From Octopus sinensis (taxonomy: Eukaryota), in assembly GCF_006345805.1 (NCBI RefSeq), contig NC_043004.1, positions 91,822,001-91,886,000 on the forward strand: DNA of 64,000 nucleotides, read 5' to 3'. Each line of letters begins with the position of its first letter. Within the stretch, counting starts at the first letter, position 1. Positions 130-62,807 of the stretch are shown one piece after another. A program made the position numbers and the translations under genes. The notes beneath the pieces were generated by a model. The model saw only the letters and a program-made list of their open reading frames with translations. It was not told where the DNA came from and searched no databases.

Positions 130-1030
130 TCAGGTGCAGTGTTGACGAATCTCAGGAAGCATGGAAGTTTTGAAGGATGCAGTGCTCCTACAACTAACAA
201 CTGATGCCGGCAGTTTGTTCCATGCTTCAGCAACTCTTAGCGTGAAAAAATGTTTCCGAAAGTCATGGGAGCTGTGCGGTTTTCTGACTTTGTAAACATG
301 TCCACGGGTGTTAGACAGATGGAGTTTGAAAAGGTACTCAGAGTTATTGTTTGTAAGATAGTTAATAATTTTATTGGTGTCTATCAAGTCAGCTGCCAGA
401 CGTCGGCGTTTCAATGTATCCATACCCAGGAAAGGAAGGCGTTCAGAATATGGCAAATGCCTGATGGAGGGTATTCTCTTGGTTGCACATCGCTGAACGG
501 CTTCCAGACGATTAATATCCTGGGCAAGATAGGGGTTCCAGACCGGTGATGCAAATTCCAGGTGAGGTCGCATCATAGCTATATAAAGCCGCAGATAGAT
601 AGCCGGAGAGCTGCTCGCAAAGGACTTGGTGAGTGATGCCAAGACACCCTCAGCCTTCTTGGCAATTTTAGCAATGCGTTTTGTTCAACTCAAATTGGTC
701 AACAATAACAACCAGGTCACGTTCACACGAAGACTTTTTGAGATTAGTGTTGTAGAGGGAGTAGGTAGACGCTGGGTTTTTCCTCCCAAAATGCATGATG
801 GTACATTTGTCCACAGCCAGCTTGAGTTGCCAGTCCATGATCCACTGCTGCATTGTGTCCAGGTCTGATTGCAATAGAGATCTATAGTGTACAGGATCTG
901 ACCTCTTTATTTCGAGGTACAGCTTGAAGTCATCTGCATATTTCAGCACTGTGACATTCTTTAAGTTGGCATCTATGTCATTAACATATGCAACAAATAA
1001 AAGGGGACCAAGAACAGATCCCTGTGGTAA
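130..1030 (-). mobile_element. 5'-truncated CR1/L2/Jockey-group LINE, RT C-terminal part (pseudogene)
   Basis: Minus strand reads PQGSVLGPLLF..YVND..LKYADD..K(F), then RPHLEFASPVWNPY and FFTLRVAEAWNKLP; broken across ORFs 668-949 and 130-642. Confidence 0.85.
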
Positions 1031-2148
1031 GGCAAATGGAAAAAAAACTACAGCAATAAAGATGAAACTGAAAACAACAACAAAAATGAGACCACAGAAT
1101 TAAAAAAAAAAATTTTACATGAACTTCTTCATTCAACACACATGCGTGTCTTATGTCAGAGGAGAGGTATTACCCCTGTTTTCAGGGCCACCAAAGTTGG
1201 TGCGTTAAGAGAGGAAGTTATCTTTAGTCAGAAGATCCGAATGAAAAGTTTAAAATTGTGTGAAATCCACTAAAAGCATTCCAGGGGCAGATGATGGTGT
1301 GAAACTAGGCAACGTATTAAATTTCTTTCGGTCTCTTGTTTTAAAGGTTTCGCAATAAGAATCTAGCTTCAGCTGTTTAGAATATGTACCATTTCATTGG
1401 ATTAATGTAGTCCTAGTTACACTGTGCATAAAAATGATTGGATCGACAGTATTACCACGAATGGAACGCCGTTGATCACACGTTAGTCCGACTGCGGTTG
1501 ATTTAAGATAACATCTAAAACCAAGTATTGTTGGTTAGTTGCCACGTTCACCACTCAGCCGCAAGCCACGCGAGACTATACTGGAGTTTCTAGGTGGTCG
1601 GTTGACCTGCTAAAAATAACAATGATTCCTTCATGAAATTATTGGAAAGCTGTGTTGGGTGGTGTAATCTTAAGCAGAAACCTAAGAAGAGACGATGATC
1701 GCAGCTGGACGGTATTTGATAACAGGTCTATTTGATCTTGATCTGTCCGTTATGAATAACAGCAAAAATTGTCTCCCTTGTATGTTGAAATTTATATCTG
1801 TTGATGTAAAACAATTTTGATATTAATAAATATAGAAGTCTGATGTTGTATTTCTTTGCATAACATTACAGGTAACTACGGCTGTAAACCAAGCAACCTG
1901 AATTCCCAAAATGAAACTTTCCAGAATCATACCATAAGCTTCATAAATACTGTTATCAGCTGCAATACTCTCAGCAATAAGATGAATCCGTGATCGGCGG
2001 GGTTCCCTGTTTGGCCCATATGGGGATCTCTCTTATCTGGAGGTTACATCTCATTTTTCTTTATGTTATTTTTCATGTTATCTCATTCATGATATTATAT
2101 AAATCTCGTTGTAAGTGTATCATCCGCCACTGTTATCACAAATAAAGA

Positions 2149-2187
<39 letters not shown>

Positions 2188-2203
2188 TATTATTACTATT
2201 ATT

Positions 2204-2435
2204 ATTGAGTGAGAGAGCAGTTCATGCCATCAAAGTGACACTGGGGTAAAATATACGAAGCCCAATATACCCATCATGACTACCTGTCTGATAAAGGTAC
2301 ACCAGGCACATGCATCACAACCATATGTGCGCGACATGGTGATTTCATATCAAGATAAACAGCACATGACCTTGCAGGTGGGGCCCAGTTAGAATTTTCT
2401 TCAGGTTGAGTAACCCATCCCGCTCAAACGGTCCC
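2204..2435 (-). mobile_element. 3' fragment of a non-LTR retroelement lying within a (TTA)n array
   Basis: About 230 bp of non-repetitive sequence ending CTCTCTCACTC(AAT)n on the minus strand, with (TTA)n on both sides. Confidence 0.4.
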
Positions 2436-2484
<49 letters not shown>

Positions 2485-2507
2485 GTCATCATCATCATCA
2501 TCATCAA

Positions 2508-2700
2508 GGCGGCGAGCTGGCAGAATCGTTAACGCGCCGGACGAAATGCTTAGCGGAATTTCGCCCGTCGCTACATTCTGAGTTCAAATTCCGCCGAGAT
2601 CGACATTACCTTTCCTCCTTTCGGGGTCGATAAAATATGTACCAGTTGAACACTATGGTCGATGCAATCGACTCATCTCCACCCACAAAACTGCTACACT
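2508..2700 (+). mobile_element. tRNA-derived SINE, family M (GGCGGCGAGCTGGCAGAATCG head)
   Basis: A-box/B-box-like head (GAGTTCAAATTCC) plus central CCTTTCGGGGTCGATAAA domain; near-identical copies elsewhere in the window. Confidence 0.85.
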
Positions 2701-3582
2701 TGTGGCAAAAATTTCAAATAATAATAATTATTATCATTAATATTATTATTACTGCTGTTGTTGTTGTTGTTGTTTGCGTCATTGTTATTGATTTGTTTTA
2801 TACGAGTTGCTGCAAGTCTCATCCAGTGACTTCAACAAACAGCAATTTAGACGCTTACTATGGATGCTATATTTCAAGAAAAGGAGACCAAATGCGGAGA
2901 AAATTCCATTAAAAATCTGTTGTTATGTTTGCTATTTTAAAAGATTTTAAAAGATTCAAATATTCTCAGGTTGAAAGTATTTTCTTGGGATATGCACTCT
3001 ACTCATGTGAACAATTTTTTGTAGCTATGATACTTTTACATTTCCGGGTATTTGATAATAGTGTTTCAGACAGCCGTTTGATATTCCCAAAACTCCGATT
3101 ATTACAGGTATAGTTGTCGCACTTGGATACCACATTTTAAAGACCCTATTTCAAGGTACTTTTATAAACTTTACTTTACAAGCGATTTTACAGAGATGTT
3201 GCAGTCTACTAGAATCTAAGGTTAAGCATGTTTTGTCAAAGTGATTTTTCTAACCCCAATATCTGGTCTATTGGCCTGAATAATTCGATCAGCTTAAATA
3301 TCTTTGCCGTTTCATGGCGTTGGTGTTGTGACAAGTTTAATTATGTTTCCCTATCGAACCATAACTCTTGTTTTAGGACGAGGAGCATTTTGTACCTTCT
3401 GTGTAAAAATATTTTTCAGCTGATATCTATTCTTAATTTGTATTAAGGAATTTCAGGATAAATTATTGCTGCACCTACTATAGATATTTTCTGCACTACC
3501 CTTATTCCCATATTAAGGGCAAATTTTCCGAAGTTTGCTCTCATATTGTCACTTTTCTCAAAGCCCAAGTGCTAGCTGGTGC

Positions 3583-3670
3583 ATTAGGTCGACGTTGCCC
3601 TTCATCCTTTCGGGATCGATAAAGTAAGTACCAGCTGAGCACTGGGGTTGATGTAATCGACTATCCTTCT
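3583..3670 (+). mobile_element. SINE family M internal fragment
   Basis: GTCGACGTTGCCCTTCATCCTTTCGGGATCGATAAAGTAAGTACCAG matches the family M central domain. Confidence 0.65.
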
Positions 3671-4437
3671 TCCCAAATTTCTTCCGTTGTAGATTTAATA
3701 GTCACATATCAACCTTGTTGTTTTGGCTCGAATATTGTTGTGTAGTGCCACGTAATAAAGTATAATGCTGTGTTTGTATTTCGATATTGTGTAACGTGGT
3801 ATTGGCGTCGTTTCCTTATTATGGATGCTAATTGGTTAACATGCAGTTGAGGAGCTTACAAAAGTTTGGAAGGAAATGGACTCGTAATGAACACAGTGAT
3901 ATCCGATCTGTTTCATATGAGCAATCTAACGATCACAATCAATGTAACTTGAAAACCGTATATATATTTTATATAAGATGAAAATAGTTATATTTATACT
4001 GGATTTGTGGAGCTGGTCTCGGGCACCAGACCACGCAGAGCACCCAAATTCCGTTTTTGAGATCAGCTCAGTGCCACTCTATTCCCCCGTTCCATCAGCC
4101 CAAATACCTGGGAGACAATCCCTAAGGACCATCCATAGTGGTGGTATTTCATCGTCAAGGGAACGGACTAGATGAAAAATAATAGACATCAAGAAACAGA
4201 GATCAAACGTCGAAGACACAGAGAGCAATTCGCATTTCATCGTCCACCGTCAACCCACCCCTGCGATATGTGCCTTTGGCTCTTCTATACCGCCTTTGGT
4301 CTCAACATCCACCTCAAGCATCGACACTCTTCGCTCAAATCAGGATGAAGAAGCTCAATCACTCGCTAAAGATTAACTATTCAGATACGTGTTAATGCCG
4401 ACGACAAAGAAGCAACTACATTGGAACGGTGTACCAC

Positions 4438-4438
4438 A

Positions 4439-4479
<41 letters not shown>

Positions 4480-4493
4480 CATTATTATTATTG

Positions 4494-4530
<37 letters not shown>
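4438..4530. repeat. (ATT/ATC)n microsatellite, tail of the adjacent RTE LINE
   Basis: Trinucleotide array directly abutting the 3' end of the minus-strand RTE fragment. Confidence 0.85.
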
Positions 4531-4539
4531 GGCCAGGTT

Positions 4540-5187
4540 CCAATCTGCAGCAACAAAAGCCACTCACCACATTTCTCGGTCCACCATCATTGCCTCGAGG
4601 TCCTGGATAGATTCCAGACCAGTATCTGCAAGTAAATTGCCGATGTATGTGTAACGACGTTTTCCTCTTCTTACACCACCATGAAGTGAGTTCTACAAGA
4701 CTAATTTGAATTCATCCAGTTCAGGGTGACGCACGCAGTGACCAGATAATCGCTGCCATCTTTGCCTGATCTTGTCACTAACTTTCGGCAGGTCTCCATA
4801 AAGACATTCGTTTGCCATATATTACTGCCATTTCACATTTAGGGCCATTTTTAGCATCCTTGTGTAACATCGCTTTAGCCCGTTTGGTAATTTCTTTGCT
4901 AGCGTCCATATTTCACAGCCATATAATAGTACTGATTCGACAGGTACAATGAACAGCTTGATTATGATTTGCCCCGACAATTTAGAGTTTGAGAGCTTCT
5001 TTAGTTTGTGAGAGGCTGTTCATACTTCTGCCTTCCTGATTTTGATGTCTGCTTTCGAACTACTCCCCCAACCACCTAAACACTTTGCAAATTTTGAAAT
5101 ACTTAAGGTAACACTTGAGAGGACTAGACATGAAGGTGTCTGTAGACGCGTAATGAGGTACTTCTGTTGATATAACATTAAGGGATT
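4540..5187 (-). mobile_element. RTE-clade LINE 3' fragment (degenerate RT C-terminus)
   Basis: Minus strand reads IYGCEIWTL..CYTRMLKMALNVKW..LYGDLPKVSDKIR..LSGHCVRH..RGKRRYTYI..DREMW, with stops. Confidence 0.75.
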
Positions 5188-5204
5188 TCATTAGTTCTCT
5201 TTTA

Positions 5205-5392
5205 TTTTACTTTATTGCCCACAGGGGGGGGGGTAAACACAGAGAGGACAAACAAGGACAGACAAACGGATTAAGTCGATTATATCGACTCCAGTGCATA
5301 ACTGGTACTTATTTAATTGATCCCGAAAGGACGAAAGGCAAAGTCGACCTCGGCGGGATTTGAACTCAGAACGTAGCGGCAGACGAAATACG
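5205..5392 (-). mobile_element. SINE family M, 3' part of a copy split by the Tx1 insertion
   Basis: Continues the 5' part at 10729-10791; the whole SINE is flanked by the 17-bp duplication TCATTAGTTCTCTTTTA (5188-5204 and 10792-10808). Confidence 0.92.
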
Positions 5393-5641
5393 AATTTCTT
5401 TATTGCCCACCGGGGGCCAAACATAGATATGGACAGTACAACTGATGGGATCAGTGAATCGATATGATTTTACATAAATGTGACATCAAAAATAAAATAC
5501 AATACATAAAAATCGAATGGAATACACAGTACAAAAACAATACAAATGAAGCGATGATCAAGTTACGCTCCGATCCCACAAGCCCCGATCTACCGCTGAT
5601 ACCTTTTTATTTTTCCTTTTTTTTTTTTTTTCCTCGTCTAT

Positions 5642-8600
5642 TCACACGGTTCCTTGCACGCACAACACTCGTGCAACATACTTCCATCTCTTTTGGAACG
5701 TACACTCTGACAGACACCTCTTCTCCAGCCACAGTTTCCTTTTCAAATGAAAAGAAAAAAAGGATCGTAAATTGTCACCAGAGATAAAGTTGCCTGTCTT
5801 AATTCCTTTTATCCTAGTATTCCATACAGCCTCTTTTGCTATTGCTACAACCGTGAGAAAACAATTCTTACCTTCGTTCGTTAGAACTCCCGGTGGGTCA
5901 ATTTTTATAATTGACTCAGTCGACAGCCGTACTCTTCCTTCGCCGGACAACAGATGTTCAGCATAAGCCCACATTTCAGTTATCTCCGGACACTGAACAA
6001 TAGCGTGAGGGACGGTTTCCCTGTCCCCACCGCATCTTGGACAGGTCGGCGACTGACGTTTACCATGTCTTGCGAGCTTATCCCAAACGGGCAAGGCACC
6101 TCTGTAGCATTGCCAGGTTAAGGACTTTTGGAAGTTGTCCAACGTTCTCAACCCGAATGTACGATGAAACAAGCTGTCCAGTTGAATAAATCCGAGACCT
6201 AGAGTCGACCCCAGGCCATCGTCGCATTCAGACTCTACCAACCCACTATATAAAATCCGCTGGCGTTGCCCGAGCGCCGGAACAGCAAGAGGGCCTTACG
6301 GCACTCTTTATGCCACTCACTCGACCTCGGTCTACGAGAACACCAGGCTTCCTGTTCGCAAAAACTCTTGAACTCAGGGAACATTTGTCTGGCCAGCGGA
6401 GACCACACCCGTTCACTATCCAGGAGAATCCAGAGGTGCCTCAACCTCAACGCATGTCTGCGCATCATTAACCAAGGCATCCCTAAACCTCCATTTAAAG
6501 GCTTTTGACAGCAGACAGAGCGTTTCACAAGTGGCGACCTGCCCTTCCACAAAAAGCGAAAGAGCTGTCTCTCCAACCTGATCAACCACGAATCCGGACA
6601 GGGCACGACAGTCAGGCGGTAGGTAATGACCGATGCGATAAACACATTGGCCACTTCCGCCCTCCCTTTCAGGGATAGCCACCGCCAAGACCAGGTCTTG
6701 ACTACTGCAGCCACCCTGCTCAATACCTCCGTCCAGTTCTTCTCTATCTGGAGGCCTGGTCCAAACCAGACTCCCAGCAACTTAACCGGTCCCTCCGTCC
6801 AGCGCCTAACAACACTGTCTGAAGGCATCGACTTGCCAACCCAGGTGCCGAGCTGCAAGCCGACCGACTTTTCCCGGTTAATCTTTGCTCCTGCTACCTC
6901 CTCGTAAGCCTCAATAGTCTTACCTACTTCACGTAGGCGTGCCACTGTGGTTACACTGATAGTGATATCATCCGCGAAAGCCGTAACAAACTCCTCTAGT
7001 CCTGGTTCTCTCGGGATGCCACTCAACCTTTGCAGTAATGGCTCGAGAGCCATCACATACAAAAGTGGTGAAAGCGGACATCCTTGAAGAACCGAGCGTC
7101 TGATGCAGAACGGCTTCGAAAGGAAACCGTTCACCCGAACTATCGAGTCAATGTTGTGGTACAAAGCGATAAACCACCTGAGGAAGCCAAGGCCCAGGCC
7201 AAACCGCGCAAGTACAGTCGCTAGGTATCGATGGTCAACCCTATCAAAAGCTTTAGACTGGTCCAAATGCACCAATGCCCCACCTTTGCCAGATTTATTA
7301 CCAAACCTCTCTATGGTATAGCGAATAAGATGGAGGGTATCCTGAATGGTTCTGCCTGGGATGGCACATGTCTGTGCCTCCCCGACTATACCATTCGCGA
7401 CACGCGCCAACCTTTTTGCTAGAACCTTGGCCAAAATCTTCACTTCTGCGTTTAACAGAGTGATGGGCCTGAAATTCTCTAGAACGTCCCCCTTGTCCGG
7501 GTCCTTTCTGACCAACGTCACTACTCCCCGGCGCACAGATCTGGGGATAAACCCATTCTGTTTCCAGTTCACGTACACGTCAGTCAGTAGTTGCCCGAAC
7601 AAGTCTGGCATACATTTATACAGCTCGTACGGAAGACCATCAAGTCCCGGTGACTTACCCGCTTTACAATCGGCCAAAGCCTCCATCACCTCCTCAAGTG
7701 TGATTGGCCCTTCGCAAGACTCCGCATCCGAGCCCGAGAGGCACGGCAGCCCGGTAAGAAAGTCCTCGAGGGCTCTCCCACCACCAGGACCGCCGTCACC
7801 CCGAACAGCTGGGCGAAGTACTCCCGAAAGACCTCACACATTTTCTCGGGTTCGTTTATCAAGACACCATTTTGATTCGTCAAAGACCGAATAGAGGAAC
7901 TATTTCCTTGCCGAGCTTCCACCACTCGGGCCCATCCAGCGGCTTTGATTCCTTCACTTCCCATTGCACGTAACTTAGCTCTGGTAATACTTCCCATGTG
8001 GTGGGCTTCAAGATGCTGGTTTAACTCCAGTCTTTTCACCCTCGCTTGGTCTGTATTACCAGTCCTCCAGGCTTCTTCTAGTTCCTTAACTAGACCATCT
8101 CCTATTTTACGTCCCTTCTTAGCTAAACTTATGCTAAACCTAATAGACTCATATTTGATGGCTCTTTTTAGGGCGTACCACCATTTGTTATTAATGATGG
8201 TACCTGTTAATGCCCTCTGTATTAACATCTTGATCCGCTTTCTGTACTCCTCAATCGCCAAAAGGGACGTATTGAGTTTCCAGTAGCCAGATCCCTGTCT
8301 ATGCAACTTATCTACCGTCAGTTTACAGGTAACCATCTTGTGGTCACTGTAGCTGACTAGAAAAAACTGTGGACACTCAACTATGGACTTATCTTTTTCT
8401 CTAATTAAAATCCTATCTAGATATGTTCTGGTAGACCTGTCACTATTTGACCACGTCCACTGTGGAGTGTTCGGGTGCTCCAACCTATATGGATCTGCTA
8501 GCTGAAATTGACTTAGCAGATCCCGAAAGCCTGTGTTACATTTTCTGTTCATGTTCGAGTTTGAGCCAACACAATCTGTGTGTGCTGCACATATTGTATT

Positions 8601-9026
8601 AGAGTCTCCTAACACTACTAGTGAATGCGACGTGGCTAGGAACTTTCCTAGGCCACGAAAATATTCAGTTTGCGGGCCAATAATGTTTGGTGCATAAATA
8701 GCGACCAGCCTGATTGTCTTGCCACAACTGAATGTCAAGTCGAGAACGACCAGCCTGCCTTCTGGGTCAGAAAAAACCAACTTTTTCTCGGCTACCCGGT
8801 TTCTTTTTAGTAGGACCAACACCCCACCCCCACCTCCCGCCCGACTCGGAGAAACGTATTTCTCGTAGCCGTTCAGGAGGGGGAGCAGATCTCTTGGCCC
8901 CTTCACCCGGGTTTCCGTTGCAACAATTACATCCAAATTTCTCGACCTGATGTCATTCAGAAAGCGTCCTTGCTTCCAGCTTGACAACAGGCCATGAACA
9001 TTTAAACAACCAATGTGAATAGCCAT
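5642..9026 (-). pseudogene. Tx1 ORF2: APE endonuclease + reverse transcriptase + CCHC zinc finger, two frameshifts
   Basis: MAIHIGCLNVHGL, YSDHK (APE); SPGLDGLP, FRPITLLN, LDQSKAFDRVDH, QGCPLSPLLY, AFADD (RT); CPRCGGDRETVPHAIVQC. Frameshifts near 7800 and 6250 join ORFs 7686-9029, 6235-7689 and 5642-6241. Confidence 0.93.
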
Positions 9027-9037
9027 CACTTACCTGT

Positions 9038-9385
9038 TTAATTAGGATTGTCCGGTGGAGGGGGACCCTTCACCTTTTTTTTATCCAGGGTCGGAGGTGG
9101 ACGGTCTTGGGAAATAGATTTGTCAAAATCCCGTCTCACCACCGACACAGAATTATCAGGTGGAGGGGGAATCTCCACCTTTTCCTTTTCTCGCGGGATC
9201 GGAGCTGGTAATCCATGAAATATCGACTTGTTAAAATCTAATCTCAATGAAGATACAGTCTTTCTGTACTTATTTTGTAGAATTCTATAAGTCTTATTTG
9301 AGACTTCATATATGTCGTAATTGATAAATTCCTCTGAAAGGTTATCAATTTTTTTTACAGTCTTTATGAGTTGAATGTCTCTCAT
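9038..9385 (-). CDS. Pro/Lys-rich ORF between ORF1 and ORF2, probably the frameshifted ORF1 C-terminus
   Basis: 115-aa ORF; its frame stays open upstream into the end of ORF1 (-1 frame); ends 12 nt before the ORF2 ATG. Confidence 0.5.
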   Translation of the reverse strand: MRDIQLIKTVKKIDNLSEEFINYDIYEVSNKTYRILQNKYRKTVSSLRLDFNKSIFHGLPAPIPREKEKVEIPPPPDNSVSVVRRDFDKSISQDRPPPTLDKKKVKGPPPPDNPN

Positions 9386-9414
9386 GAGCTCAGTATCTTT
9401 AGTGTATACGGCTA

Positions 9415-10566
9415 TTATGCCTTTTTCTTCTTTTCTCTTCTGGCAGTCTTTTTTGGTCGTTGTTCTGTAGTAGTCGCCGCTCTCGACTGGGTTGCTGGTT
9501 GTATTTTTCTTTTGTTTGTTGTTTTTTTCTCATCTGTTTCTTCTTTATCTTCTTCCTCTTTGTCTTTTTTCTCCTCTTCCTCCTCTTCTTCATTTTCCTT
9601 GCAGTTCCTTCGAATGTGGCCTAATTGACCACATAAAAAACATCGAGGTTTTCGGCCCTCAACAAACACCACGAGGTTCTCCTCCCCTACCTCAATTGTC
9701 TCAGGAATTGTTTGAATTATTTTAGGGTCCGCTTGAATGAGAAGATTAATTGTTTTACCATCCCAGCGTGGGTTTTCCGTAGCGGTAGCCTGGAGGAGAG
9801 TAATTTTTTCTACCTCTTTGATTAGGACTGCCGCCAACAACCACATAGGTTCGACCTCTGGCGGGACCCTTGTAATTTTTATTCGCGACGTCCTCATCCC
9901 CATATAATAGGGTATTAACTCCACGTCGTTCGTTTTCAACGTTTCCACTGAGTTCTTGTGTGCTATTTCTTTATTGGTGAACCTTACTTCCACCGTTCCG
10001 AATTTTTTTCCTCTTCTCAGAAATACTACGTCGCCCAATATTGGCTTTAAGCACTTTTCTATTTTCTCTTCTGACATTCTTTCAATTTTTCTATTTTGTA
10101 GACAATATGTTTTGAAAATTATTGTTTTTTGCTTTTCTTCCTGTAATAACTTTTGCGGAGGTTCAATTTTCACACTGTTGTCATTTATTTCCATCATTTT
10201 GCTGTATTTCATAATTTCGCTTTTATTCGTCGACAGTATCTGGGTTCCACCCCCAGCAGCCAACGCAAAACTTTTTTTTCCATTTTTTGGTTCTATCTGG
10301 ATGCTAGGCACATCAATTATTCTCTTCGACACAATGCCTTTGTTCTCTGGCAAAGTCGGAAACTCTTCTGGTGAAAGTTCTGACGAGCTCTCAGACACAT
10401 CTCCAAAAATATCAAATATATTATCCTTCTGCTATTCCTTCTTGTAGCGGGGGAAACCCCTATTTCCTTGTCTGTAGTTGGCTCCTCGCCGGACATGTAT
10501 TTCCTCCTCTCAACAGGAGAAACAAGTATTTCTGCTCCAACGGTAGGCTCCATGCTAGACGACATT
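9415..10566 (-). CDS. Tx1 ORF1 (gag-like, zinc knuckle), likely frameshift near 10430
   Basis: CFLCGQLGHIRRNC CCHC knuckle, preceded by an RRM-like region and followed by an acidic/basic low-complexity tract; upstream MSSSMEPT segment is in another frame. Confidence 0.8.
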
Positions 10567-10728
10567 CTTCCCCCCAAAGGGGGAATGAACAACGCGTGCT
10601 ACCACAAGCACTAAGTGTTTTCAATTGAAAACTCCAACAGTTAAGTTATTCAACAGTTTAACAAGAAACAACAGTTGTTAACAATATTAACACCACGAAA
10701 CAGCAATTCTTACTTCACGAACACATGT

Positions 10729-10791
10729 GCGGCAGACGAAATACGGCTACGCATTTCGCCCGGCGTGCTAACGATTCTGCCAGCTCGCCGC
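10729..10791 (-). mobile_element. SINE family M, 5' head of the split copy
   Basis: GCGGCGAGCTGGCAGAATCGTTAGCACGCCGGGCGAAATGCGTAGCCGTATTTCGTCTGCCGC, matching intact copies. Confidence 0.92.
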
Positions 10792-10879
10792 TCATTAGTT
10801 CTCTTTTAATGAAATTATGAAATGTCATCGTCTCTTTCAGGATATTTACTTACATTTTTAAGCTCCTAAACTGCACAAT

Positions 10880-11170
10880 GTGGAGGCACATGGCCTAGAG
10901 GTTAGAGCAGCGGACTCGCGGTCGAGGGATCGCGGTTCGAATTCTCAGACCGGGCGATGTTTACGTTCATGAGCGAAAGCACCTAAGCTCCACGCGGCTC
11001 CGCCAGGAGGTAATGGCGAACTTCTGCTGACAACTTTCTCTCACTCTTTCTTCCTGCATCTTGAAGTCCGCCTGCGACGGACTGGCGTCCCGTCCAGGTG
11101 GGGAACCTATACGCCAAGGAAACCGGGAGACCGTCCCTTATGAGCCAGGCGTGGCTCGAGAAGGAACAAA
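10880..11170 (+). mobile_element. tRNA(Arg)-like SINE, family R, tail type c
   Basis: GTGGAGGCACATGGCCTAGAGGTTAGAGCAGCGGACTCGCGG head; tail GGACTGGCGTCCCGTCCAGG..GGCTCGAGAAGGAAC. Confidence 0.8.
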
Positions 11171-11554
11171 CTGCACAATAACATATTTATACCTGCACAG
11201 TTGGATTATTTTCGCGTTGACAAGTTTGTCAGTTTGGTCAAGAATTTAATCGTATCAGTTATCGAATTGCCATGTCAAGAATATACCTTTGTATTAAACA
11301 TTGTTCTCGCTACATATATGTAAGTCATCAACGGTGACACCTTAAATCCCGAACAAAAAGCTCTATATTAAATCGAACGACACTACATGAGTGGTCTCCC
11401 GTAGGTAATAATTAAAAATGCAAAACAAGTTTGAAAAATCGCATAAGGGGGGAGATAACTATCGAGACTATAACTTACGTGAAAGCCATAGTAAGGGAAG
11501 TAACTGAGGTTATTATTAAACATTTGATTTACTATCTGATCGTAATGATGCATC

Positions 11555-11569
11555 CACACACACACACAC

Positions 11570-11617
<48 letters not shown>

Positions 11618-11722
11618 GCACACACACACAAACACACCCTGAAATATTCACATATATAAAACAGTCATCTATCAGTTTCCGTGTACGAAATCCACTCACA
11701 GGGCTTTAGTTGGCCTGAGGCT

Positions 11723-11803
<81 letters not shown>

Positions 11804-11836
11804 ATATATATATATATATCTCCATATATATATATA
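11555..11836. repeat. (CA)n and (TA)n microsatellites
   Basis: Direct inspection. Confidence 0.9.
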
Positions 11837-11852
11837 CAATTCTGACTCAGCA

Positions 11853-14800: not shown

Positions 14801-15390
14801 AGCTATAGATCGAATTAGAATAGGATTTTTTAAAAATCAAAAATCTTTCACAAATCATCTCTTCGCGTAACAATAAGTTGTTAAATACAAATCCACTTAA
14901 TGAAAATAACATTGATATTATTAACACTAACCATTCTTTGAACAATAATAACAACAATATTAGTATTTCTGATATGAATTCGAATCGCATTCGTTTCCTT
15001 AGCAGTAATTCTAAGACTAGTAACTCAGTTTATCAATATAATATTAAAACGGGTTCTGATGTCTTTTTTTACATAGGTAGTTCTTCATCTCAGTTGTCCA
15101 AAAGATTATCTAACCATTACTCTACATTTAGACATATCAATAAACGCAACAATACTGGGCTTAGTAGATTAATTCGGTCTCTTAAGGAACTTAATAAATA
15201 ATTTGATTTGAAATGGAATATTCTATCTAGATCCTTTCCATATGATAAAGGAAAATCCCTTTGTCCGCTCTGTAACAAAGAAAAGTCTCTTATTCTGTTC
15301 TCGGAGAATTCTCTTGTAAACACGTTTAAAGAATGCGTTTATCGTTGCAAACATTGGAAAAAATATACCTTTAGTTCCTATAAGTAATTT
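11853..15390 (+). mobile_element. Penelope-like element (RT C-terminus + GIY-YIG), interrupted by a Chapaev3-like transposon at 12219-14434
   Basis: [28 protein letters not shown] continues after the insertion as PANVDIYN..LKAGYKEKI; GIY-YIG VYQY..FYIGSS..KRLSNH..SRL; then CPLCNKEKSLI..CKH. Confidence 0.85.
12219..14434 (-). mobile_element. Chapaev3-like (CMC/Transib-related) DNA transposon, degenerate transposase about 14149-12491
   Basis: Termini CATTGTGCAACA / TGTTGCACAGTG with TTA on both sides. Motifs FCYICG, GDQDKSWAP, LFIDAS, GYTKFCCFLSLW, PLHIKLG, HSHLDFF, VSDEHGERFHQ. Family name assigned from recalled terminal and TSD features. Confidence 0.85.
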
Positions 15391-16190: not shown

Positions 16191-16440
16191 ATGCTTTAAA
16201 TATTAGTTTGTGTGTGCTGTTAAGTATTATATCTGCAGGTTGCGTAATGAAACAATGTTAAGTGAAATGTTGAATGACAAACATAATGTTATTAGGTTCT
16301 AAACTAAAATTGTAGCTGAAAATAGATATAAAAAGGCAATACTAAAATTCTACTGATTTCTCTTTGTCGATGTTTTTTGAAAGAAAATCATGTTTCTAAA
16401 ACTTTTATGATTTCAGCACATAATAAAGCATGACTTCTAC

Positions 16441-16645
16441 TATAGACCCAAGGCCTGAAATTTGAGGGTAAGAGGCTGAGTCGATTACATCGACCCCAGT
16501 GCGTAAATGATACTTAATTTATCGACCCCGAAAGGATGAAAAGCAAAGTCAACCCCGGCGGCATTTGAACTCAGAACGTGATGACAGGCGAAATACTGCT
16601 AAGTGTTTTGCCCGGCGTGCTAACGATTCTGCCAGCTCGCCGCCT
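16441..16645 (-). mobile_element. SINE family M, alternative tail (AAATTTCAGGCCTTG)
   Basis: Family M head and central domain; 3' end differs from the 43548 and 51279 copies. Confidence 0.8.
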
Positions 16646-18183
16646 TAAGATGTTATACTAATACTTCATTATGGGACTCACATGTGCTTTATAGAGTGTC
16701 AGCAACTGTTGACAATTTTCTAGCCCCGAAGAAAAGAAACAGTGCTTGAGATGCTGTCCTAGCTGTGTTAAGTATATACTTTCGCTTGGAGAATTCCTCA
16801 ATGATAGTGAGGTCTAGTATTTTGAGCGAGCATGAGGGCTTTAGCTTCTTTGTTCCTTGATACTAGTTCTTGTGTTGCCTTAACTGCTTTTCATTTATAG
16901 GTATTTCATGTTGATATAATTTCCTTTGTATAAAACCCGAATCTGTGATGATTATAGGTTTATCATCACTTGACTTAAACTGTTTGTTTCTTTCCTTCCA
17001 GCCTTCTACATATTCTCTAGCTAAGGTTTTCTGCTTCATTGCATGTATTTGGCCTCTTACCAAATAGTTTTCATACTGTTTTGAAATAAGAAAAACCTTC
17101 AGTGTTAGCTTTCAGTGCTACACATCTCAGTCAATGCAGACGCTTTATTTAATCTATTCTTATTCTGCTCAGTTATTTCAAATGTTCCCTATTTAGGGAC
17201 TTTCTTTTCTCATCGTTTTCGTAAGCGTTCCGTCAACTCATTTCCAGCTTAGTTTGTAGATTTTTTTTTACAATTTCTGTCGTAATTACTCCTTCCTCCT
17301 CAAAACTGTTTATTACTTCAGATTTTTTGTGTTTGCTGGTTTCTTTGAAAACTGGAAACTGTTCTTTTGTTTGTTTTGTTTTTTCTTTCGTATTTTGGAA
17401 TATTTTCTATTAGTTCCCATTGTGTTAGCCTCTGTATTTTTGTTAAATATAACTCAGATTTTTGGTGGTGTTTTCTAAAAGTTTTCAATATTTATCTTGT
17501 TTTTCTATCTAGTTCTACTAATTTACTTAGCGAGTGTTCGGTTGAAAATATTATAACTGCTTATTACACTGAAGCAGGTAGATTATTGGTGCTTATTAAC
17601 CATTTTGCTGTTAACACTGAATAAGTCACAATCCGTTCTAAAGCGTCTGTCTGTAACATAATACATTCATTTGTGTGTGTGTGTGTGTGTGTGTGTGTTT
17701 GTGTGTGTATGTGCGTATTGAACCTACTTCATCCAACTGATCTCTCTTCTACTGTCCATATAAAACTTGTAAACAAACACAGCTGTTTATGACTGTGCAG
17801 CGTACTTGATCCACTTTAATTAGTTTGCATACGCAGTAGTAGCTCAGATCTTTAGATTCACAATATATATATATATATATACATGTATATACGTATATAT
17901 AAATACATTACATATATATAATATACATGTATACGTACACATCTACATATATATACATTTAGGTGTGTATTAAAGAATGTACTGAGTATCCCTTTTTCTA
18001 TTACCAGTATTGCTTGTATATGAACTCGCATGTGTATCTCTTGTATGTGTGTATAGATTGTGTTTGCTTGTGTATATATTTATACTTCAAGCGCATTATT
18101 CTTTATGCGAATGTCTGTGCGTGAGTATCTGCGTATTTATTTGTACACTAATGTGCCTACCTAATTAGGTGTGATTTCTCTCT

Positions 18184-43547: not shown

Positions 43548-43778
43548 AGCCGGCGAGCTGATAGAAACATTAGCACGCCGGGCGAAATGTTTAGCAACAT
43601 TTCGTCTGCCGCTACGTTCTGAGTTCAAATTCCGCCGAGGTCGACTTTGCCTTTCATCCTTTCGGGGTCGATTAAATAAGTACCAGTTACGCACTGGGGT
43701 CGATGTAATCGACTTAATCCGTTTGTCTGTCCTTGTGTGTCCCCTCTGTGTTTAGCCCCTTGTGGGTAGTAAAGAAAT
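43548..43778 (+). mobile_element. Full-length SINE family M with Tx1-like tail
   Basis: Flanked by the 16-bp duplication AGGTTTCATTTCTCTT (43532-43547 and 43779-43794). Confidence 0.93.
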
Positions 43779-46899: not shown

Positions 46900-50250
<3,351 letters not shown>

Positions 50251-51180: not shown

Positions 51181-51278
51181 TGTAGCCTAATTAGTAGCTT
51201 TAATTTTCATTTCTTTTTTGCATAGTTTCTGTTGTTAATTCTCTTTATTCTGCAAAGCTATCTTTCCTTTCAACTTTT

Positions 51279-51511
51279 TTTTTTTTTTTACTACCCACAA
51301 GGGGCTAAACGCAGAGAGGACAAACAAGGACAGACAAACGGATTAAGTCGATTATATCGACCCCAGTGCGTAACTGGTACTTATTTAATCGACCCCGAAA
51401 GGATGAAAGGCAAAGTCGACCTCGGCGGAATTTGAACTCAGAACGTAACGGCAGACGAAATACGGCTAAGCATTTCGCCCGGCGTGCTAACGATTCTGCC
51501 AGCTCGCCGCC
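51279..51511 (-). mobile_element. Full-length SINE family M with Tx1-like tail
   Basis: Flanked by the 16-bp duplication TTTCCTTTCAACTTTT (51263-51278 and 51514-51529). Confidence 0.92.
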
Positions 51512-51729
51512 TTTTTCCTTTCAACTTTTGTTTTGCGTTAGTTAGCTTTCTTGAACACAGAAAATGTTTCTTTTTGTTTTTGTTTTATTCCATTATAACA
51601 ATAACTCAGATGAAAATCATTAACATAGGCGCAATTACGCTGCTGACAAAAGACACCGACGCAGAGGATGCCGGCGACGCTTTTAACTTTGCTAAACACA
51701 GTTTAAGATTTTGGTTAAGGTGTTACAGA

Positions 51730-52546
51730 TAATGGTTAGTGTTCATCATAAGTGGTATGGCCGGAAAGCACAAAGGTGAGCAATTTTGAACAGGTTCATA
51801 CACGACAACCTCCATCTTATGCGATACACCACAGAGAGAGATTGTGGGGGGAAAAAAACAGGCTTCAGTAGAACCCCGATCAATTTGAATCAGTCGAAAG
51901 TTTTCGATAGTCGATATTCGTTGCTTGGAAACCGTTCTCATAGCGGCCTGGTTTGGATATATTTTCAGAGGCTACACCTTGGCTATGAACAGCGTTATCT
52001 GCTCGAGGTCAAAGTAAACGGCTGCTTCTCGTGACCATTTTGCATCACCCTCTCGGTCCGACAGTACTTGCCACTCTTAACTCTTGTATACATGCTACAG
52101 TCACTATCGCTGAAGTTTGAAGGGCTTCATTTATGAACTGAGACCTGGAAGAGCCTCGACAGCATATACGGATAATATCACTGTCAAGGCGTCGGATGCG
52201 AACCAGGCGAAATTGGTCGGCAATATTCTCAAAGAATGCAAGTCTTGGAAGGGGTTATGGTCAACCCGCACAAGTCAGTGTCTTGTGGCACGGCACCTGG
52301 AGAAGCAACTTCATTCCGGCGAACAGCGTTGTGGTACAGCTTTTGCTATTTAAACGGGGTGAATGCGTTTCTGGCCGAGCGGTCCATCAAACCGCCCGTT
52401 CCCGCTTCAAGTCCTGACTGTTGATGCGCAAACACGTAGTGGATGAACGGATGTGGTCACCGTTTGCAAGGTACGTCTTTCTGCAGTTCGTCTCCTTGGC
52501 AGTGCTGCAGTTCTGGGTAAAGCAAAGACAGTGACCGAATAGTAGC

Positions 52547-52597
<51 letters not shown>

Positions 52598-52659
52598 TAG
52601 TAGCAGCAGCAGCAGTAGTAGTAGTAGTAGTAGTAGTAATAGTAGTAATAGTAGTAGAG

Positions 52660-52693
<34 letters not shown>

Positions 52694-53150
52694 AATCGCT
52701 ATCACTACACTAGTAATGAGCAAGGGTAGCCGCAACAGTGAAGGCAAAGATAACAGTAGAGGCAGCAACTAGAAAAATATCACCTACTGGTGATACAAGA
52801 AACTTTTTGAGTTAGTCCAAGTGGAAAAAGAACAAAAAAAAAGCTTAGATCAATTAAAAGCCTTCGATTGGGTCAACTAGCAATACTTGGTGGCTGTTCT
52901 CAAAACAGATAGTTTTAGGCTCATTTTCAAGGGCTGGATCGCTGCAATATACATCGATATTTTTTCGGTGGTCTGTGTAAAATAGCTATCTATCGGTGAT
53001 AGATTAAATTTGACACTCGGTTTAATACATCCATCATCATTTTCAGTATTAAACCCTTACGTACTTTTAGCGAAGTTAAATTCTTTTGCCAAAATTCTTG
53101 CCAGGTCACCGGGCTAAGGATAACGCTGATCCTTCCCTCACAACCGCCTA
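51730..53150. mobile_element. Scrambled, degenerate Tx1-type RT fragments, interrupted by (GTA)n at 52543-52692
   Basis: NLHLMRYTTER..LNQSKVFD, TAYTDNITV and LDQLKAFDWV resemble ORF2 of the 5393-10728 element. Confidence 0.65.
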
Positions 53151-53224
53151 AGGTCCTAAAACGATTCATAGGTTAATGCGTCTTGGTCTTTTTCTTCGCA
53201 TTAATCAACACACACATACGTCTT

Positions 53225-53480
53225 TTAGTCTTTTAGTATTTTACTTGTTTCAGTCATTTGACTGCGGCCATGTTGGAGCACCGCCTTTTAGACGAGCAAA
53301 TCGACCCCAGGACTTATTCTTTGTAAGCCTAGTACTTATTCTATCGGTCTCTTTTGCCGAACCGCTAAGTGACGGGGACGTAGACGCACCAGCACCGAGG
53401 CTATAGTAGAAGACACTTGCTGAAGGTGCCACACAGTGGGAATGAACCCGGAACCATGTGGTTGGTAAGCAAGCTACTTA
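53225..53480 (-). mobile_element. SINE family C, internally deleted
   Basis: Matches blocks of 45057-45468. Confidence 0.75.
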
Positions 53481-53592
53481 ATTATTTTTTTATATATAAT
53501 CGTATACATAAATATATACATATACATACGCACAAACACCATACATATATATCCAAATACATACATAGGCAGAAATATACTCAGAAACATAT

Positions 53593-53662
<70 letters not shown>

Positions 53663-53738
53663 TATATATATATATATATATATAATTATATATTATATAT
53701 ATATATATAATATATATATATATATTATATATATATAT

Positions 53739-53802
<64 letters not shown>

Positions 53803-53805
<3 letters not shown>

Positions 53806-54100
53806 AGGCGCAATGGCCCAGTGGTTAGGGCAGCGGACTCGCGGTTGTAGGATCGCGGTTTCGATTCCCAGACCGGGCGTTGTGAGTGTTTATTGAGCGA
53901 AAACACCTAAAGGTTCCACGAGGCTCCGGCAGGGGGTGGTGATCCCTGCTGTACTCTTTCACCGCTCTTTCTCCCACTCTTTCTTCTGTTGGCCTGCTCG
54001 CTTAGCCAGCTGGGTGGCATCATTCGAAGGCTAAAACAATGCGAACGCATTGTGACCAGCGATGTGTAACAACGTCCGATGGTCTGGTCGGTCACGTGAT

Positions 54101-54107
<7 letters not shown>
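53803..54107 (+). mobile_element. SINE family R, tail b, within TG/TA microsatellites
   Basis: Matches 20441-20736 and ends GATCACGTGA(TA)n. Confidence 0.88.
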
Positions 54108-54143
<36 letters not shown>

Positions 54144-54476
54144 TGAGTGTATTTTTACCTTGTTAACAATTAACACGGAAAAAATAAATAAATAGTTTCC
54201 AGGGTAGCAAAAATCTCACAAGTAAAGATGTTGTAACTCCTTGTTTATAAAGGTAGAAACTTCGTGTTTACGTGGAATATTTTGAATAATATATGAATAA
54301 ATAAATGGAGTTTAACGCAGGTGTAAATCAAATATTTTTACTTTCGACACATTTTTCGAAAATTCCACTGATACTATATATATATACACACACACATACA
54401 TATATATGTATATACACACACACACACACAAATATATATACACACACACACACACGTATATATATATATATATATT

Positions 54477-54532
<56 letters not shown>

Positions 54533-55166
54533 ATATATTATATAATATATATATGTATGTATATATATGTATATATATACACAAATTCTGACGATAATAA
54601 TGCCGTTGATGCTCAGTATGAAAATCTGTTGGTTGGTGTCTACAAGAAAACAAAGCAATTTCATTTCATTAGTCGGTATTAAAGATGAATGCTATCTTTT
54701 ATACGAATATCGATGTGCAATCAGCTCTGACGATATAGCTACATCTTAATTTAAAAGAGTGATATTTTAAAAATTGTTATGAGCCTTAGTCAAGCGCATA
54801 GTTTAAAGTAAAAAAACAGAAAAAAGATACGTAATTTATTTCCCTTGAAATTGCATAAAAGTTGCTTCCCTTGAATATTAGTGGCTTAGTTAAGAGTTGC
54901 TTCCCTTCCCAAAATGCATATTTATGGCTATTTTGTTTTTCTTAAAAATTAGATGAATATAAATACAAGCGCGCGTACAGAGGCGTTTAGGCCCAGAAAA
55001 CTAGACCAGAAAGGTTTAGACCCAGAAAACTAGAAGAAAAACGTTGAGAGCTATAAACTTTACTGTTCCATTAAAAAAATGATAGGACAATATAGAATAC
55101 GAAACATTCTTAGCTACAATCTCCAGAAAAGTTGTTTACAATACGTATTTTCATCGAAAAGGTGTT

Positions 55167-55236
<70 letters not shown>

Positions 55237-55917
55237 GTTTATCAGCTGAGTCTATCGTTAATATTGTCACGCCTCCCTCCTTCAAACGGGAAGGAAGATC
55301 TATTTTCGTCATCCTTGTGGCTATGGCGAAAGAATGTATCTGGTGGACGCGTCTGAAAGGATTGGAGACAAACACTTTCCTCTCTGGTCAATCTCTCATC
55401 AACTTCTTCAAGTACCACTTGAAAAGGAAAGTGAGAGTAGAGAGGCAAGTTTTGTCTAGCGAATGTTTTAAAAAAAGATGGGTGAATGTAGCAAGAATGG
55501 CACGTATGAATGACGAAGCCATCTTGAGCATGATCCTATGAACCCAGAAATTGAAAACAGAGAGTTGCTTATTTGCAAAAAAAAAAAAAAAAAAAGAAAT
55601 ATAACATGTGACTCCATTGACCGAGGTTACCGTGGTCTTTTCCGTAGGCTTTTCTTTCCACGGGTAAACCTCACCTGTCCTCCCCTTTACACTTCATAGT
55701 GACATTTCTGTGATACGATACCTATTGATCAATTTTTTTTTTCCTCTCCCCCTTTTTTTTTTTAACCCCCCTTTTTTTTGTCCTCTTTCTCCCTTTTACG
55801 ATCCCTTTTGATCGAAACTCCCCCTTCCTTTTTTTTTTTTTTTTTAAACCTTCAAAAGAAAAGCTCTACCTTGTAATTTGTTCTATCTGTGTGCAGCCCT
55901 GTGTGGCTAATAAAGAA
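55237..55917 (+). mobile_element. 5'-truncated Tx1-type element (second family) inserted in an (ATCT)n array
   Basis: MAKECIWWTRLKG..FFKYHLKRKVRVE..FKKRWVNVAR aligns to the ORF2 end at 5642-5900; 3' end GCCCTGTGTGGCTAATAAAGAA; (ATCT)n on both sides. Confidence 0.88.
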
Positions 55918-56014
55918 CATCTATCTATCTATCTATCTATCTATCTATATCTATCCATCCATCCATTCTCAATCCATCCACTCCATCCTCCATCATCCAT
56001 CTATCTTCATATCT

Positions 56015-62606: not shown

Positions 62607-62807
62607 TCCTTTCTATTATAGGCACAAAGCGTGTAATTTTGGGAGGAGGCTAGTTGATTACATCGATCCCAGTACAAAACTGATCGACCCCAAAAGGATG
62701 AAAGGCAAAGACGTCCTCGGTAGAATTTGAACTCAGAACGTAAAGGCGGATGAAATGTCGCTAAGCATTTTGCCCGATGTGCTAACGATTCTGCTAGCTT
62801 GTCGTCT
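62607..62807 (-). mobile_element. Diverged SINE family M, alternative tail (GTGCCTATAATAGAAAGG)
   Basis: Head and central domain recognisable, with many substitutions. Confidence 0.7.

What the first reader, a model, noticed from the sequence alone, without database searches (positions are those of the whole stretch)
5393..5460. Tx1/L1-clade LINE 3' end is shared with the abundant family M SINE: candidate LINE-SINE partner pair
Seen: LINE end TCTATGTTTGGCCCCCGGTGGGCAATAAAGAAAT versus SINE end (43745-43778) TCTGTGTTTAGCCCCTTGTGGGTAGTAAAGAAAT, 28/34 identical by eye. The second Tx1 family end (55877-55917) matches the SINE at 33/41. All can form a GCCC..GGG(C/T) stem-loop before A(A/G)TAAAGAA. 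TSD lengths agree: 17 bp for the LINE; 17, 16 and 16 bp for three SINE copies. Known: shared 3' tails mark stringent LINE-SINE pairs, and mammalian L1 does not need one. Inference: a Tx1 family with stringent 3' recognition mobilises this cephalopod SINE.
Basis: partly seen in the sequence, partly recalled or inferred. Interest (0 to 1): 0.72.

Follow-up and report, generated by a model that had tools for sequence, protein, structure and literature searches.

The report
Octopus SINE borrows an L1/Tx1-like LINE tail
An abundant octopus SINE ends in the same ~35-40 bases (a small GC hairpin plus AATAAAGAAAT, no poly-A) as an L1/Tx1-like LINE. The same match is seen in Octopus sinensis and more sharply in Argonauta, so this LINE lineage is the likely engine that copies the SINEs filling about a tenth of octopus genomes.

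Summary
The LINE lies on the minus strand (10728..5393), and a 17-bp target-site duplication fixes its 3' end exactly. Its last 34 bases match the SINE's last 34 at 28/34. Background 34-mers in the window never exceed 22/34.

The LINE sits inside an older SINE copy. Its tail is nevertheless its own: seven further 3' ends of the same lineage carry the motif. These come from the window's second LINE, Octopus sinensis, two Argonauta hians copies, a JGI contig and two Logan loci, and their 3'UTRs otherwise differ.

In Argonauta a LINE 3'UTR fragment and the local SINEs match at 38/41. A second, unrelated Argonauta SINE family has the same tail type.

The only shared structure is a 4-bp GC hairpin, mostly with loop CUUGU. 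Two of its pairs flip C-G to G-C. A longer stem is not supported.

ORF2 has APE, RT and zf-RVT domains and is closest to human L1 ORF2p. Tx1 subclade membership could not be tested.

TSDs are 17 bp (LINE) and 17, 16 and 16 bp (SINEs).

This is a well-supported new example of a shared-tail LINE-SINE pair, unusual for an animal L1-group LINE. Mobilisation itself is inferred, and other LINE clades could not be screened.

The parts
5393..10728 (-). LINE1: near full-length L1/Tx1-like LINE. It has a 5'UTR, ORF1 (9415-10398) and ORF2 in three frameshifted pieces (APE 7686-9029, RT 6235-7689, C-terminal zinc domain 5642-6241), then a ~250-nt 3'UTR with no poly-A.
   Evidence: ORFs. Pfam zf-CCHC, Exo_endo_phos, RVT_1 and zf-RVT. 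Ends fixed by the 17-bp TSD.
5393..5434 (-). LINE1 3'-terminal tail: ...TGTCCATATCTATGTTTG GCCC CCGGT GGGC AATAAAGAAATT (hairpin plus A-rich end).
   Evidence: 28/34 to the SINE tail; 33/42 with gaps.
5376..5392 (-). Downstream copy of the LINE1 target-site duplication, CGTATTTCGTCTGCCGC (SINE sequence).
10729..10745 (-). Upstream copy of the LINE1 target-site duplication.
10729..10791 (-). Head of the host SINE copy that LINE1 split.
5205..5392 (-). Remainder of the host SINE copy, with tail ...CCCCTGTGGGCAATAAAGTAAAA. The whole SINE is flanked by the 17-bp TSD TAAAAGAGAACTAATGA (10808..10792 and 5204..5188).
43548..43778 (+). Full SINE copy. Its tail (43737-43778) is GTGTCCCCTCTGTGTTTA GCCC CTTGT GGGT AGTAAAGAAAT. 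The 16-bp TSD lies at 43532-43547 and 43779-43794.
51279..51513 (-). Full SINE copy, 93% identical to 43548-43778, with an A-run after GGGTAGTAAA. The 16-bp TSD lies at 51529..51514 and 51278..51263. It lies just upstream of LINE2's first RT fragment.
51696..55924 (+). LINE2: a degraded second LINE of the same lineage. RT and C-terminal fragments lie at 51696-52097, 52842-52982 and 55200-55523, followed by a ~390-nt 3'UTR. The tail at 55886-55924 reads TCTGTGTGC AGCC CTGTGT GGCT AATAAAGAACATCTAT and runs into (ATCT)n.

Best explanation
The window holds a retrotransposon pair of the shared-tail ('stringent') kind.

Shown: an L1/Tx1-group LINE lineage of octopods ends in a conserved 35-45-nt module rather than poly-A. 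The module is a T/G-rich lead-in (..TGTCC..TCTRTGTTT), a 4-bp GC-rich hairpin (loop mostly CUUGU) and the A-rich terminus A(A/G)TAAAGAAAT, plus CTAT in Argonauta. The short SINE carries the same module at its own 3' terminus. This SINE has a B-box-like GAGTTCAAATTCC head (no tRNA was called by ARAGORN or Rfam) and possibly a CORE-like body.

Inferred: the LINE's ORF2 protein recognises this module on RNA, nicks the target with its APE endonuclease, and starts target-primed reverse transcription at the A-rich end. SINE transcripts with the module are copied in trans, giving insertions with the same 16-17-bp duplications and no poly-A. SINE families stay mobile by acquiring or tracking the tail variant of the LINE subfamily active in their genome.
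For: 1. Terminal match. LINE1 and the SINE agree at 28/34 exactly at both termini. Background in the window never exceeds 22/34.
2. The LINE terminus is defined by a 17-bp TSD.
3. The module is present at the 3' end of eight LINE copies of one ORF2 lineage: window LINE1 and LINE2, Argonauta L001 (two copies), JGI L002, Octopus sinensis L007, and Logan L009/L010 and L013. In the alignment of five of these 3'UTRs, only the terminal ~30 nt (and, for the two Argonauta copies and L002, the start) are shared.
4. Genome-matched variants. The Argonauta SINE matches the Argonauta LINE fragment at 38/41. The window SINE matches best an O. sinensis LINE tail at 36/42. The Logan relatives of LINE1 carry the SINE-type TTTA...GGGTA.
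5. At least three SINE families with different heads or bodies share the tail type.
6. Hairpin. 94% of cells pair, against 77% in shuffles (0/500 reach it), and two pairs change on both sides. RNAalifold finds the same 4 pairs.
7. Specificity. All ten GC-rich CTTGT hairpins, and all profile hits with E < 0.01, in the window plus loci are tails of these elements.
8. TSDs are 17 bp for the LINE and 17, 16 and 16 bp for the SINEs.
9. Nesting suggests overlapping activity. LINE1 sits inside a SINE, and a SINE lies just upstream of LINE2's RT fragments.
10. ORF2 is an APE+RT+zf-RVT protein closest to human L1 ORF2p.
Against: - No experiment. Mobilisation and RNA recognition are inferred.
- Only about 130 kb of octopod DNA could be examined. 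The 3' ends of the other abundant octopus LINE clades (RTE, Dong-R4, CR1; PMC13282606) were not available for comparison.
- The window's own LINE1 has a different loop (CCGGT) and is only 82% identical to the SINE tail, so it is not the source copy.
- The stem is only 4 bp, and the alignment used for pair counts was registered by hand.
- Single-sequence folding is not better than shuffles.
- The TSD sample is four elements.
Confidence: 0.75

Rival explanations
1. The tail is shared, but recognition is relaxed. The LINE machinery needs only the A-rich terminus (AAAGAAA) to anneal to a T-rich nicked target, as mammalian L1 uses poly-A. The hairpin would be a passenger inherited with the tail.
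For: The terminus is A-rich. One SINE copy ends in an A-run (51279-51298). Single-sequence folding energies are no better than shuffles. L1-group elements are usually relaxed (PMC3472496).
Against: The hairpin region is the most conserved part of otherwise diverged LINE 3'UTRs. It keeps pairing through two-sided changes. Unrelated SINE families carry the whole 35-45-nt module, not just an A-rich end. No element has a real poly-A tail.
Confidence: 0.12
2. A different LINE clade (RTE, CR1, Dong-R4 or another) carries the same or a better-matching tail and is the real mobiliser. The L1/Tx1-like lineage would share the module only by recombination or capture.
For: Other LINE clades are abundant and recently active in Octopus (PMC13282606), and none could be examined here. 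Tails are known to be exchanged between elements (PMC4824008, PMC11481361).
Against: In the window and all fetched loci the module occurs only on SINEs and downstream of this ORF2 lineage. It is conserved in that lineage across Octopus and Argonauta. TSDs of 16-17 bp match between LINE and SINE. That this length is typical of L1-type endonuclease insertions is my own general knowledge.
Confidence: 0.1
3. The resemblance is chance, or an artefact of the LINE lying next to SINE sequence, so that the 'LINE tail' would really be part of the flanking SINE.
For: LINE1 abuts SINE sequence on both sides.
Against: The 17-bp TSD places the tail inside the LINE. Seven other LINE copies at unrelated sites have it. 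The match is 7 sd above the window background.
Confidence: 0.01

Closest known systems
Stringent-type LINE-SINE pairs with a common 3' tail (e.g. eel UnaL2/UnaSINE1, tortoise CR1/Pol III SINE; Ohshima and Okada; reviewed in PMC3747384)
   Same: The SINE's 3' end is homologous to the LINE's 3' end at the very terminus. A small stem-loop sits near the end. There is no dependence on poly-A. Several SINE families use one LINE tail.
   Different: The known animal pairs involve the L2, CR1, RTE, I and related clades. Here the LINE is of the L1/Tx1 group, and the insertions have long (16-17 bp) TSDs. I saw no terminal tandem repeat, except that the ATCTAT end appears to have grown into (ATCT)n at one copy.
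L1-clade stringent pairs in plants and algae: maize ZmSINE2/ZmSINE3 with LINE1-1_ZM, Chlamydomonas SINEX-3_CR with L1-1_CR (PMC3472496)
   Same: An L1-group LINE with a conserved 3'-end sequence and stem-loop that is shared with SINEs. Stem nucleotides vary while loop and flank are conserved.
   Different: Those elements are from plants or green algae, and the algal pair ends in poly-A. [quoted passage not shown] The motif sequences are unrelated to the octopod one.
Crocodilian SINEU mobilised by Tx1-Mar LINEs (PMC4494074)
   Same: An animal Tx1-group LINE proposed as the driver of a SINE.
   Different: That link rests on a shared insertion target (Mariner-N4_AMi) and shared snRNA-derived 5' heads. 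SINEU has poly-A tails and no shared 3' tail. Here the link is a shared 3' tail and no common target is seen.
Octopus tRNA-derived SINEs OK, OR1 and OR2 (Ohshima and Okada 1994; cited in PMC4824008 and PMC4758252) and 'tRNA-Core'/'unclassified' SINEs of octopus repeat annotations (PMC8967140, PMC13282606)
   Same: A short, abundant octopus retroposon with a Pol III-type head. [quoted passage not shown]
   Different: I could not compare sequences because the 1994 paper and Repbase are not held. None of the papers I could search or read names a partner LINE for these SINEs.

Membership tests
Shared-tail (stringent-type) LINE-SINE partner pair | The SINE 3' terminus is homologous to the LINE 3' terminus, end to end. 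| tested here: met
   28/34 without gaps and 33/42 with gaps for window LINE1. 36/42 for the O. sinensis LINE. 38/41 for Argonauta LINE versus Argonauta SINE.
Shared-tail (stringent-type) LINE-SINE partner pair | The tail is a property of the LINE family, not of one copy. | tested here: met
   Eight LINE 3' ends of one ORF2 lineage carry it, and the LINE1 end is fixed by a TSD.
Shared-tail (stringent-type) LINE-SINE partner pair | A conserved RNA structure in the tail, supported by covariation. | tested here: met
   A 4-bp hairpin: 94% of cells paired, two pairs with two-sided changes, 0/500 shuffles reach the score; RNAalifold gives the same 4 pairs. The alignment was hand-registered and the stem is short. 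A longer stem is not supported.
Shared-tail (stringent-type) LINE-SINE partner pair | The same insertion signature (TSD length, target) for LINE and SINE. | tested here: inconclusive
   TSDs are 17 versus 17, 16 and 16 bp. That is only four elements, and no target logo is possible.
Shared-tail (stringent-type) LINE-SINE partner pair | Overlapping periods of activity. | tested here: inconclusive
   Reciprocal nesting: LINE1 lies inside a SINE, and a SINE lies just upstream of LINE2's RT fragments. No genome-wide age profile is available.
Shared-tail (stringent-type) LINE-SINE partner pair | The LINE proteins mobilise the SINE in trans, dependent on the tail. | not testable with these tools
   Needs a retrotransposition assay.
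L1/Tx1-group LINE | ORF2 with an N-terminal APE endonuclease, an RT and a C-terminal zinc-binding domain. | tested here: met
   Pfam Exo_endo_phos 3e-11, RVT_1 5e-29, zf-RVT 2e-8.
L1/Tx1-group LINE | The RT and EN are closer to L1 than to other solved LINE proteins. | tested here: met
   The RT of the close relative P0001 scores 7e-43 against human L1 ORF2p and 1e-22 against R2. The window LINE1 endonuclease piece is closest to L1 EN.
L1/Tx1-group LINE | Placement in the Tx1 subclade by RT phylogeny with reference elements. | not testable with these tools
   No Tx1 reference sequences or Repbase are on hand. Indirect support only: octopus repeat annotations list their L1-type LINEs as L1-Tx1 (PMC13282606, PMC8967140), and ORF1 has a CCHC knuckle and no Transposase_22 hit.
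L1/Tx1-group LINE | Sequence-specific insertion target (typical of many Tx1 elements). | tested here: not met
   The 3' flanks of eight copies differ: a SINE, (ATCT)n, (ATT)n, a 31-bp satellite and unique sequence.
L1/Tx1-group LINE | A 3' poly-A tail (typical of mammalian and most plant L1). | tested here: not met
   All copies end at ...AAAGAAAT(T/C...), followed directly by flank or TSD.
tRNA-derived SINE | Short, multi-copy, TSD-flanked and non-coding. | tested here: met
   Three copies have this tail and at least four have a sister tail in 64 kb. TSDs are 16-17 bp.
tRNA-derived SINE | A recognisable tRNA-like head with A and B boxes. | tested here: inconclusive
   ARAGORN and Rfam (gathering threshold) call no tRNA in the window. 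A B-box-like GAGTTCAAATTCC is visible in the sequence.

The most novel reading that the evidence does not exclude
An animal L1/Tx1-group LINE lineage uses stringent, hairpin-dependent 3'-end recognition. It has been the engine behind several unrelated SINE families in octopods since before the Octopus-Argonauta split, and so behind the SINE expansion that makes up about 10% of octopus genomes. This would be the first shared-tail L1-group pair described in animals, and it would imply that specific 3'-end recognition is ancestral or recurrent in the L1 group.
Probability: 0.45. Interest if true: 0.65.

Novelty: new member of a known kind. Interest (0 to 1): 0.5.

Why it matters
Octopus SINEs are among the most discussed features of cephalopod genomes. 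They make up 11.6% of the O. vulgaris genome, are mostly 'unclassified', and have been linked to genome reshuffling and neural expression (PMC13282606, PMC12988792). No driver LINE is named in the literature I could search. Naming the partner lineage makes SINE activity predictable from LINE activity. It gives a concrete RNA module to mutate. It also adds an animal case to the very few L1-group LINEs that share a specific 3' end with SINEs (three among more than 800 L1 elements, all from plants or algae; PMC3472496). That bears on whether specific 3'-end recognition is ancestral in the L1 group.

Tried and rejected
1. Template-switch chimera (LINE fused to a 5'-truncated SINE). Rejected: the SINE head lies upstream of the LINE, and a 17-bp duplication of SINE sequence flanks the LINE, so this is a plain nested insertion.
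2. The LINE targets the SINE specifically, as Tx1 elements target repeats. Rejected: other copies have unrelated flanks.
3. An extended 11-bp hairpin pairing TTCTGTGTT with AATAAAGAA. It appears in some MFE folds. It has no covariation support and is no more stable than with a shuffled upstream segment. It is a composition effect.
4. Collecting octopus copies from metagenome contigs. Both scans were empty.
5. The more distant LINE relatives L003, L005 and L006 (about 46% amino-acid identity, no octopus SINE in their contigs). L005 and L006 have a GGC-CTTGT-GCC hairpin about 40 nt before their end, like the window's second SINE subfamily. They are probably from other organisms and were not pursued.
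6. TSD searches for the Argonauta and O. sinensis copies gave only two 11-bp TSDs and ambiguous satellite matches.
7. ARAGORN and Rfam did not recognise the SINE head as a tRNA.
8. Pfam on the other long ORFs of the window found no further LINE.

Full report
**What is at the coordinates**

The finding's stretch (5393-5460) is the 3' end of a LINE on the minus strand. Read on that strand, it ends ...GTACTGTCCATATCTATGTTTGGCCCCCGGTGGGCAATAAAGAAATT.

- The element spans 10728..5393.
- ORF1 (9415-10398) has a CCHC knuckle.
- ORF2 is in three frameshifted pieces with Exo_endo_phos, RVT_1 and zf-RVT domains.
- A ~250-nt 3'UTR follows, with no poly-A.

The LINE is inserted inside a SINE copy. The SINE head lies at 10791..10729 and the rest at 5392..5205. 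The 17 bases CGTATTTCGTCTGCCGC of the SINE are duplicated on either side of the LINE. This fixes the LINE's ends to the base. It rules out the worry that the 'LINE tail' is really flanking SINE sequence.

**The observation**

The last 34 bases of the LINE and of the SINE copy at 43548-43778 are 28/34 identical without gaps. Among all 127,934 34-mers of the window the mean is 8.9 (sd 2.6). Only five places exceed 21: the three SINE tails and the two LINE ends.

The second LINE end (55886-55924) lies about 390 nt after the last ORF2 fragment of a degraded LINE.

One small correction: LINE2's stem is AGCC/GGCU rather than GCCC/GGG.

**Is the tail a property of the LINE lineage?**

The best protein relatives of the RT are only 61-64% identical. 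They are an Argonauta hians protein and two JGI contigs. A second search with the ORF2 C-terminus found more, including Octopus sinensis LOC118766888 and Logan contigs. I fetched the DNA around these proteins. Each LINE 3' end that the contig reached carries the same terminal module:

| Copy | Terminal sequence |
|---|---|
| Argonauta L001, full copy | CTGTGTC AGCC AGGT GGCT AAGAAAGAAATTT |
| Argonauta L001, 5'-truncated 3'UTR copy (12420-12653) | TTCTGTGTC GGCC CTTGT GGCT AATAAAGAAATCTATT |
| JGI L002 | GTTTCCG GGCC CTTGT GGCC AATAAAAGAAATC, then (ATT)n |
| O. sinensis L007 | TGTCCCCCTCTATGTTTG GGCC CTTGT GGCT AATAAAGAAATT |
| Logan L013 | GTCCCCTTTTATGTTTA ACTC CTAGT GGGT AATAAAGAATT |
| Logan L009/L010 | CCTCTATGTTTA TCC ATTGT GAGT AAAAAAAAATCC |

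In an alignment of five 3'UTRs, the terminal ~30 nt are the one block shared by all. The two Argonauta copies and L002 also align over the first ~100 nt after the stop codon. The middle is free to vary.

**SINE side**

Argonauta's 22-kb locus holds six copies of a SINE that shares body and tail with the window's SINE but has a different head. It also holds a further SINE family with an unrelated head and body and the same tail type.

The Argonauta SINE tail is TTCTGTGTTCGGCCCTTGTGGCTAATAGAGAAATCTAT. It matches the Argonauta LINE fragment at 38/41. The window SINE matches best the O. sinensis LINE tail, at 36/42. The Logan relatives closest to LINE1 share the SINE's TTTA...GGGTA variant. So each SINE resembles most the LINE variants of its own or a close genome.

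The window also has a sister SINE subfamily with the same head and body but a different, shorter tail: AGGC CTTGT GCCT ATAATAGAAAG. This looks like tail swapping.

**Specificity**

All ten GC-rich 4-bp hairpins with loop CTTGT in the window and loci are retroposon tails. A profile built from the tails hits, at E < 0.01, only SINE tails and LINE 3' ends of this lineage.

**Structure**

I aligned 21 tails, placing the hairpins in register by hand. On this alignment the 4-bp stem pairs in 94% of cells. Shuffles give 77% (0/500 reach the observed value) and slid controls give 13-56%. Pairs 2 and 3 flip between C-G and G-C. RNAalifold on a free MAFFT alignment returns the same four pairs.

The window LINE1 and the window SINE share the C-G state at pair 2. 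The Argonauta LINE and SINE share G-C.

A longer stem that appears in some single-sequence folds has no covariation support. It is also no better than with a shuffled upstream segment. I reject it.

**Clade**

The RT of the close relative P0001 and the window LINE1 endonuclease piece are both closest to human L1 ORF2p. For the RT the E-values are 7e-43 against L1 and 1e-22 against R2. Together with zf-RVT, this places the element in the L1 group.

Tx1 versus L1 proper could not be tested without reference elements. Octopus annotations call their L1-type LINEs L1-Tx1 (PMC13282606, PMC8967140). Unlike many Tx1 elements, these copies show no common insertion target. Unlike typical L1, they have no poly-A.

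**Mechanism (inferred)**

ORF2p recognises the terminal module on its own RNA and on SINE RNA. It then starts target-primed reverse transcription at the A-rich end.

- Shown: shared, conserved, covarying termini and matching TSDs.
- Not shown: binding, trans-mobilisation, and absence of the module from other LINE clades.

**Literature**

Shared-tail pairs are classical. [quoted passage not shown] Crocodilian SINEU is linked to Tx1 by a shared target, not a shared tail (PMC4494074). Bivalve SINE partners belong to other clades, Nimb, CR1-Zenon and I among those named (PMC11481361). None of the cephalopod TE papers I could read names a partner LINE for octopus SINEs. Repbase could not be consulted.

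**Verdict**

It is a new member of a known kind, of moderate interest.

Noticed in passing
window 20317-20435 (+): Full-length 5S rRNA match (Rfam RF00001, 105 bits against a gathering score of 38). It could be a 5S gene, a pseudogene or the head of a 5S-derived SINE.
   Followed up: no
window 16650..16435 (-), 62792..62611 (-), 2507-2673 (+), 3586-3662 (+): A sister SINE subfamily. Head and body match up to about position 185, but the tail is different and shorter: AGGC CTTGT GCCT ATAATAGAAAG. It has the same loop and a flipped stem. Its partner LINE subfamily is not in the window.
   Followed up: partly
window 55918 to about 56240 (+), and 48200-50400: LINE2's tail end ATCTAT runs straight into a long (ATCT)n microsatellite, as if the repeat grew from the tail. 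A 2-kb microsatellite-rich block lies at 48.2-50.4 kb.
   Followed up: no
L001 (Argonauta hians BAAFZT010000001.1) 14800-15313 and 12420-12653: Two SINE copies lie head to tail with no spacer. A 5'-truncated LINE 3'UTR copy lies about 130 nt after a full LINE's end. Tails seem to attract further insertions.
   Followed up: no
L005 (ENA ERZ26052130 ctg11195c) 348-13712: Distantly related LINEs (47% amino-acid identity) lie as head-to-tail tandem copies with a period of about 7.5 kb. The organism is unknown and no octopus SINE is present.
   Followed up: no
protein P0123: A C-terminal ORF2 fragment of this cephalopod LINE lineage is deposited as 'MAG: zinc-binding domain-containing protein [Herbaspirillum sp.]'. 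This is probably host DNA binned into a bacterial genome.
   Followed up: no
L007 (Octopus sinensis CM016876.1) about 8099-9117 and 11070 onward: The O. sinensis LINE copy sits in a satellite with a period of about 31 bp (repeated CACAGTTGTCAC).
   Followed up: no
window 55313-55323; L004 1497-1520: The ORF2 coding stretch for ..VAMAKEIVW.. (GTGGCTATGGCGAAAGAAAT) weakly resembles the tail motif GTGGCTAATAAAGAAAT. The profile E-values are 4-7, so the match is not significant.
   Followed up: no
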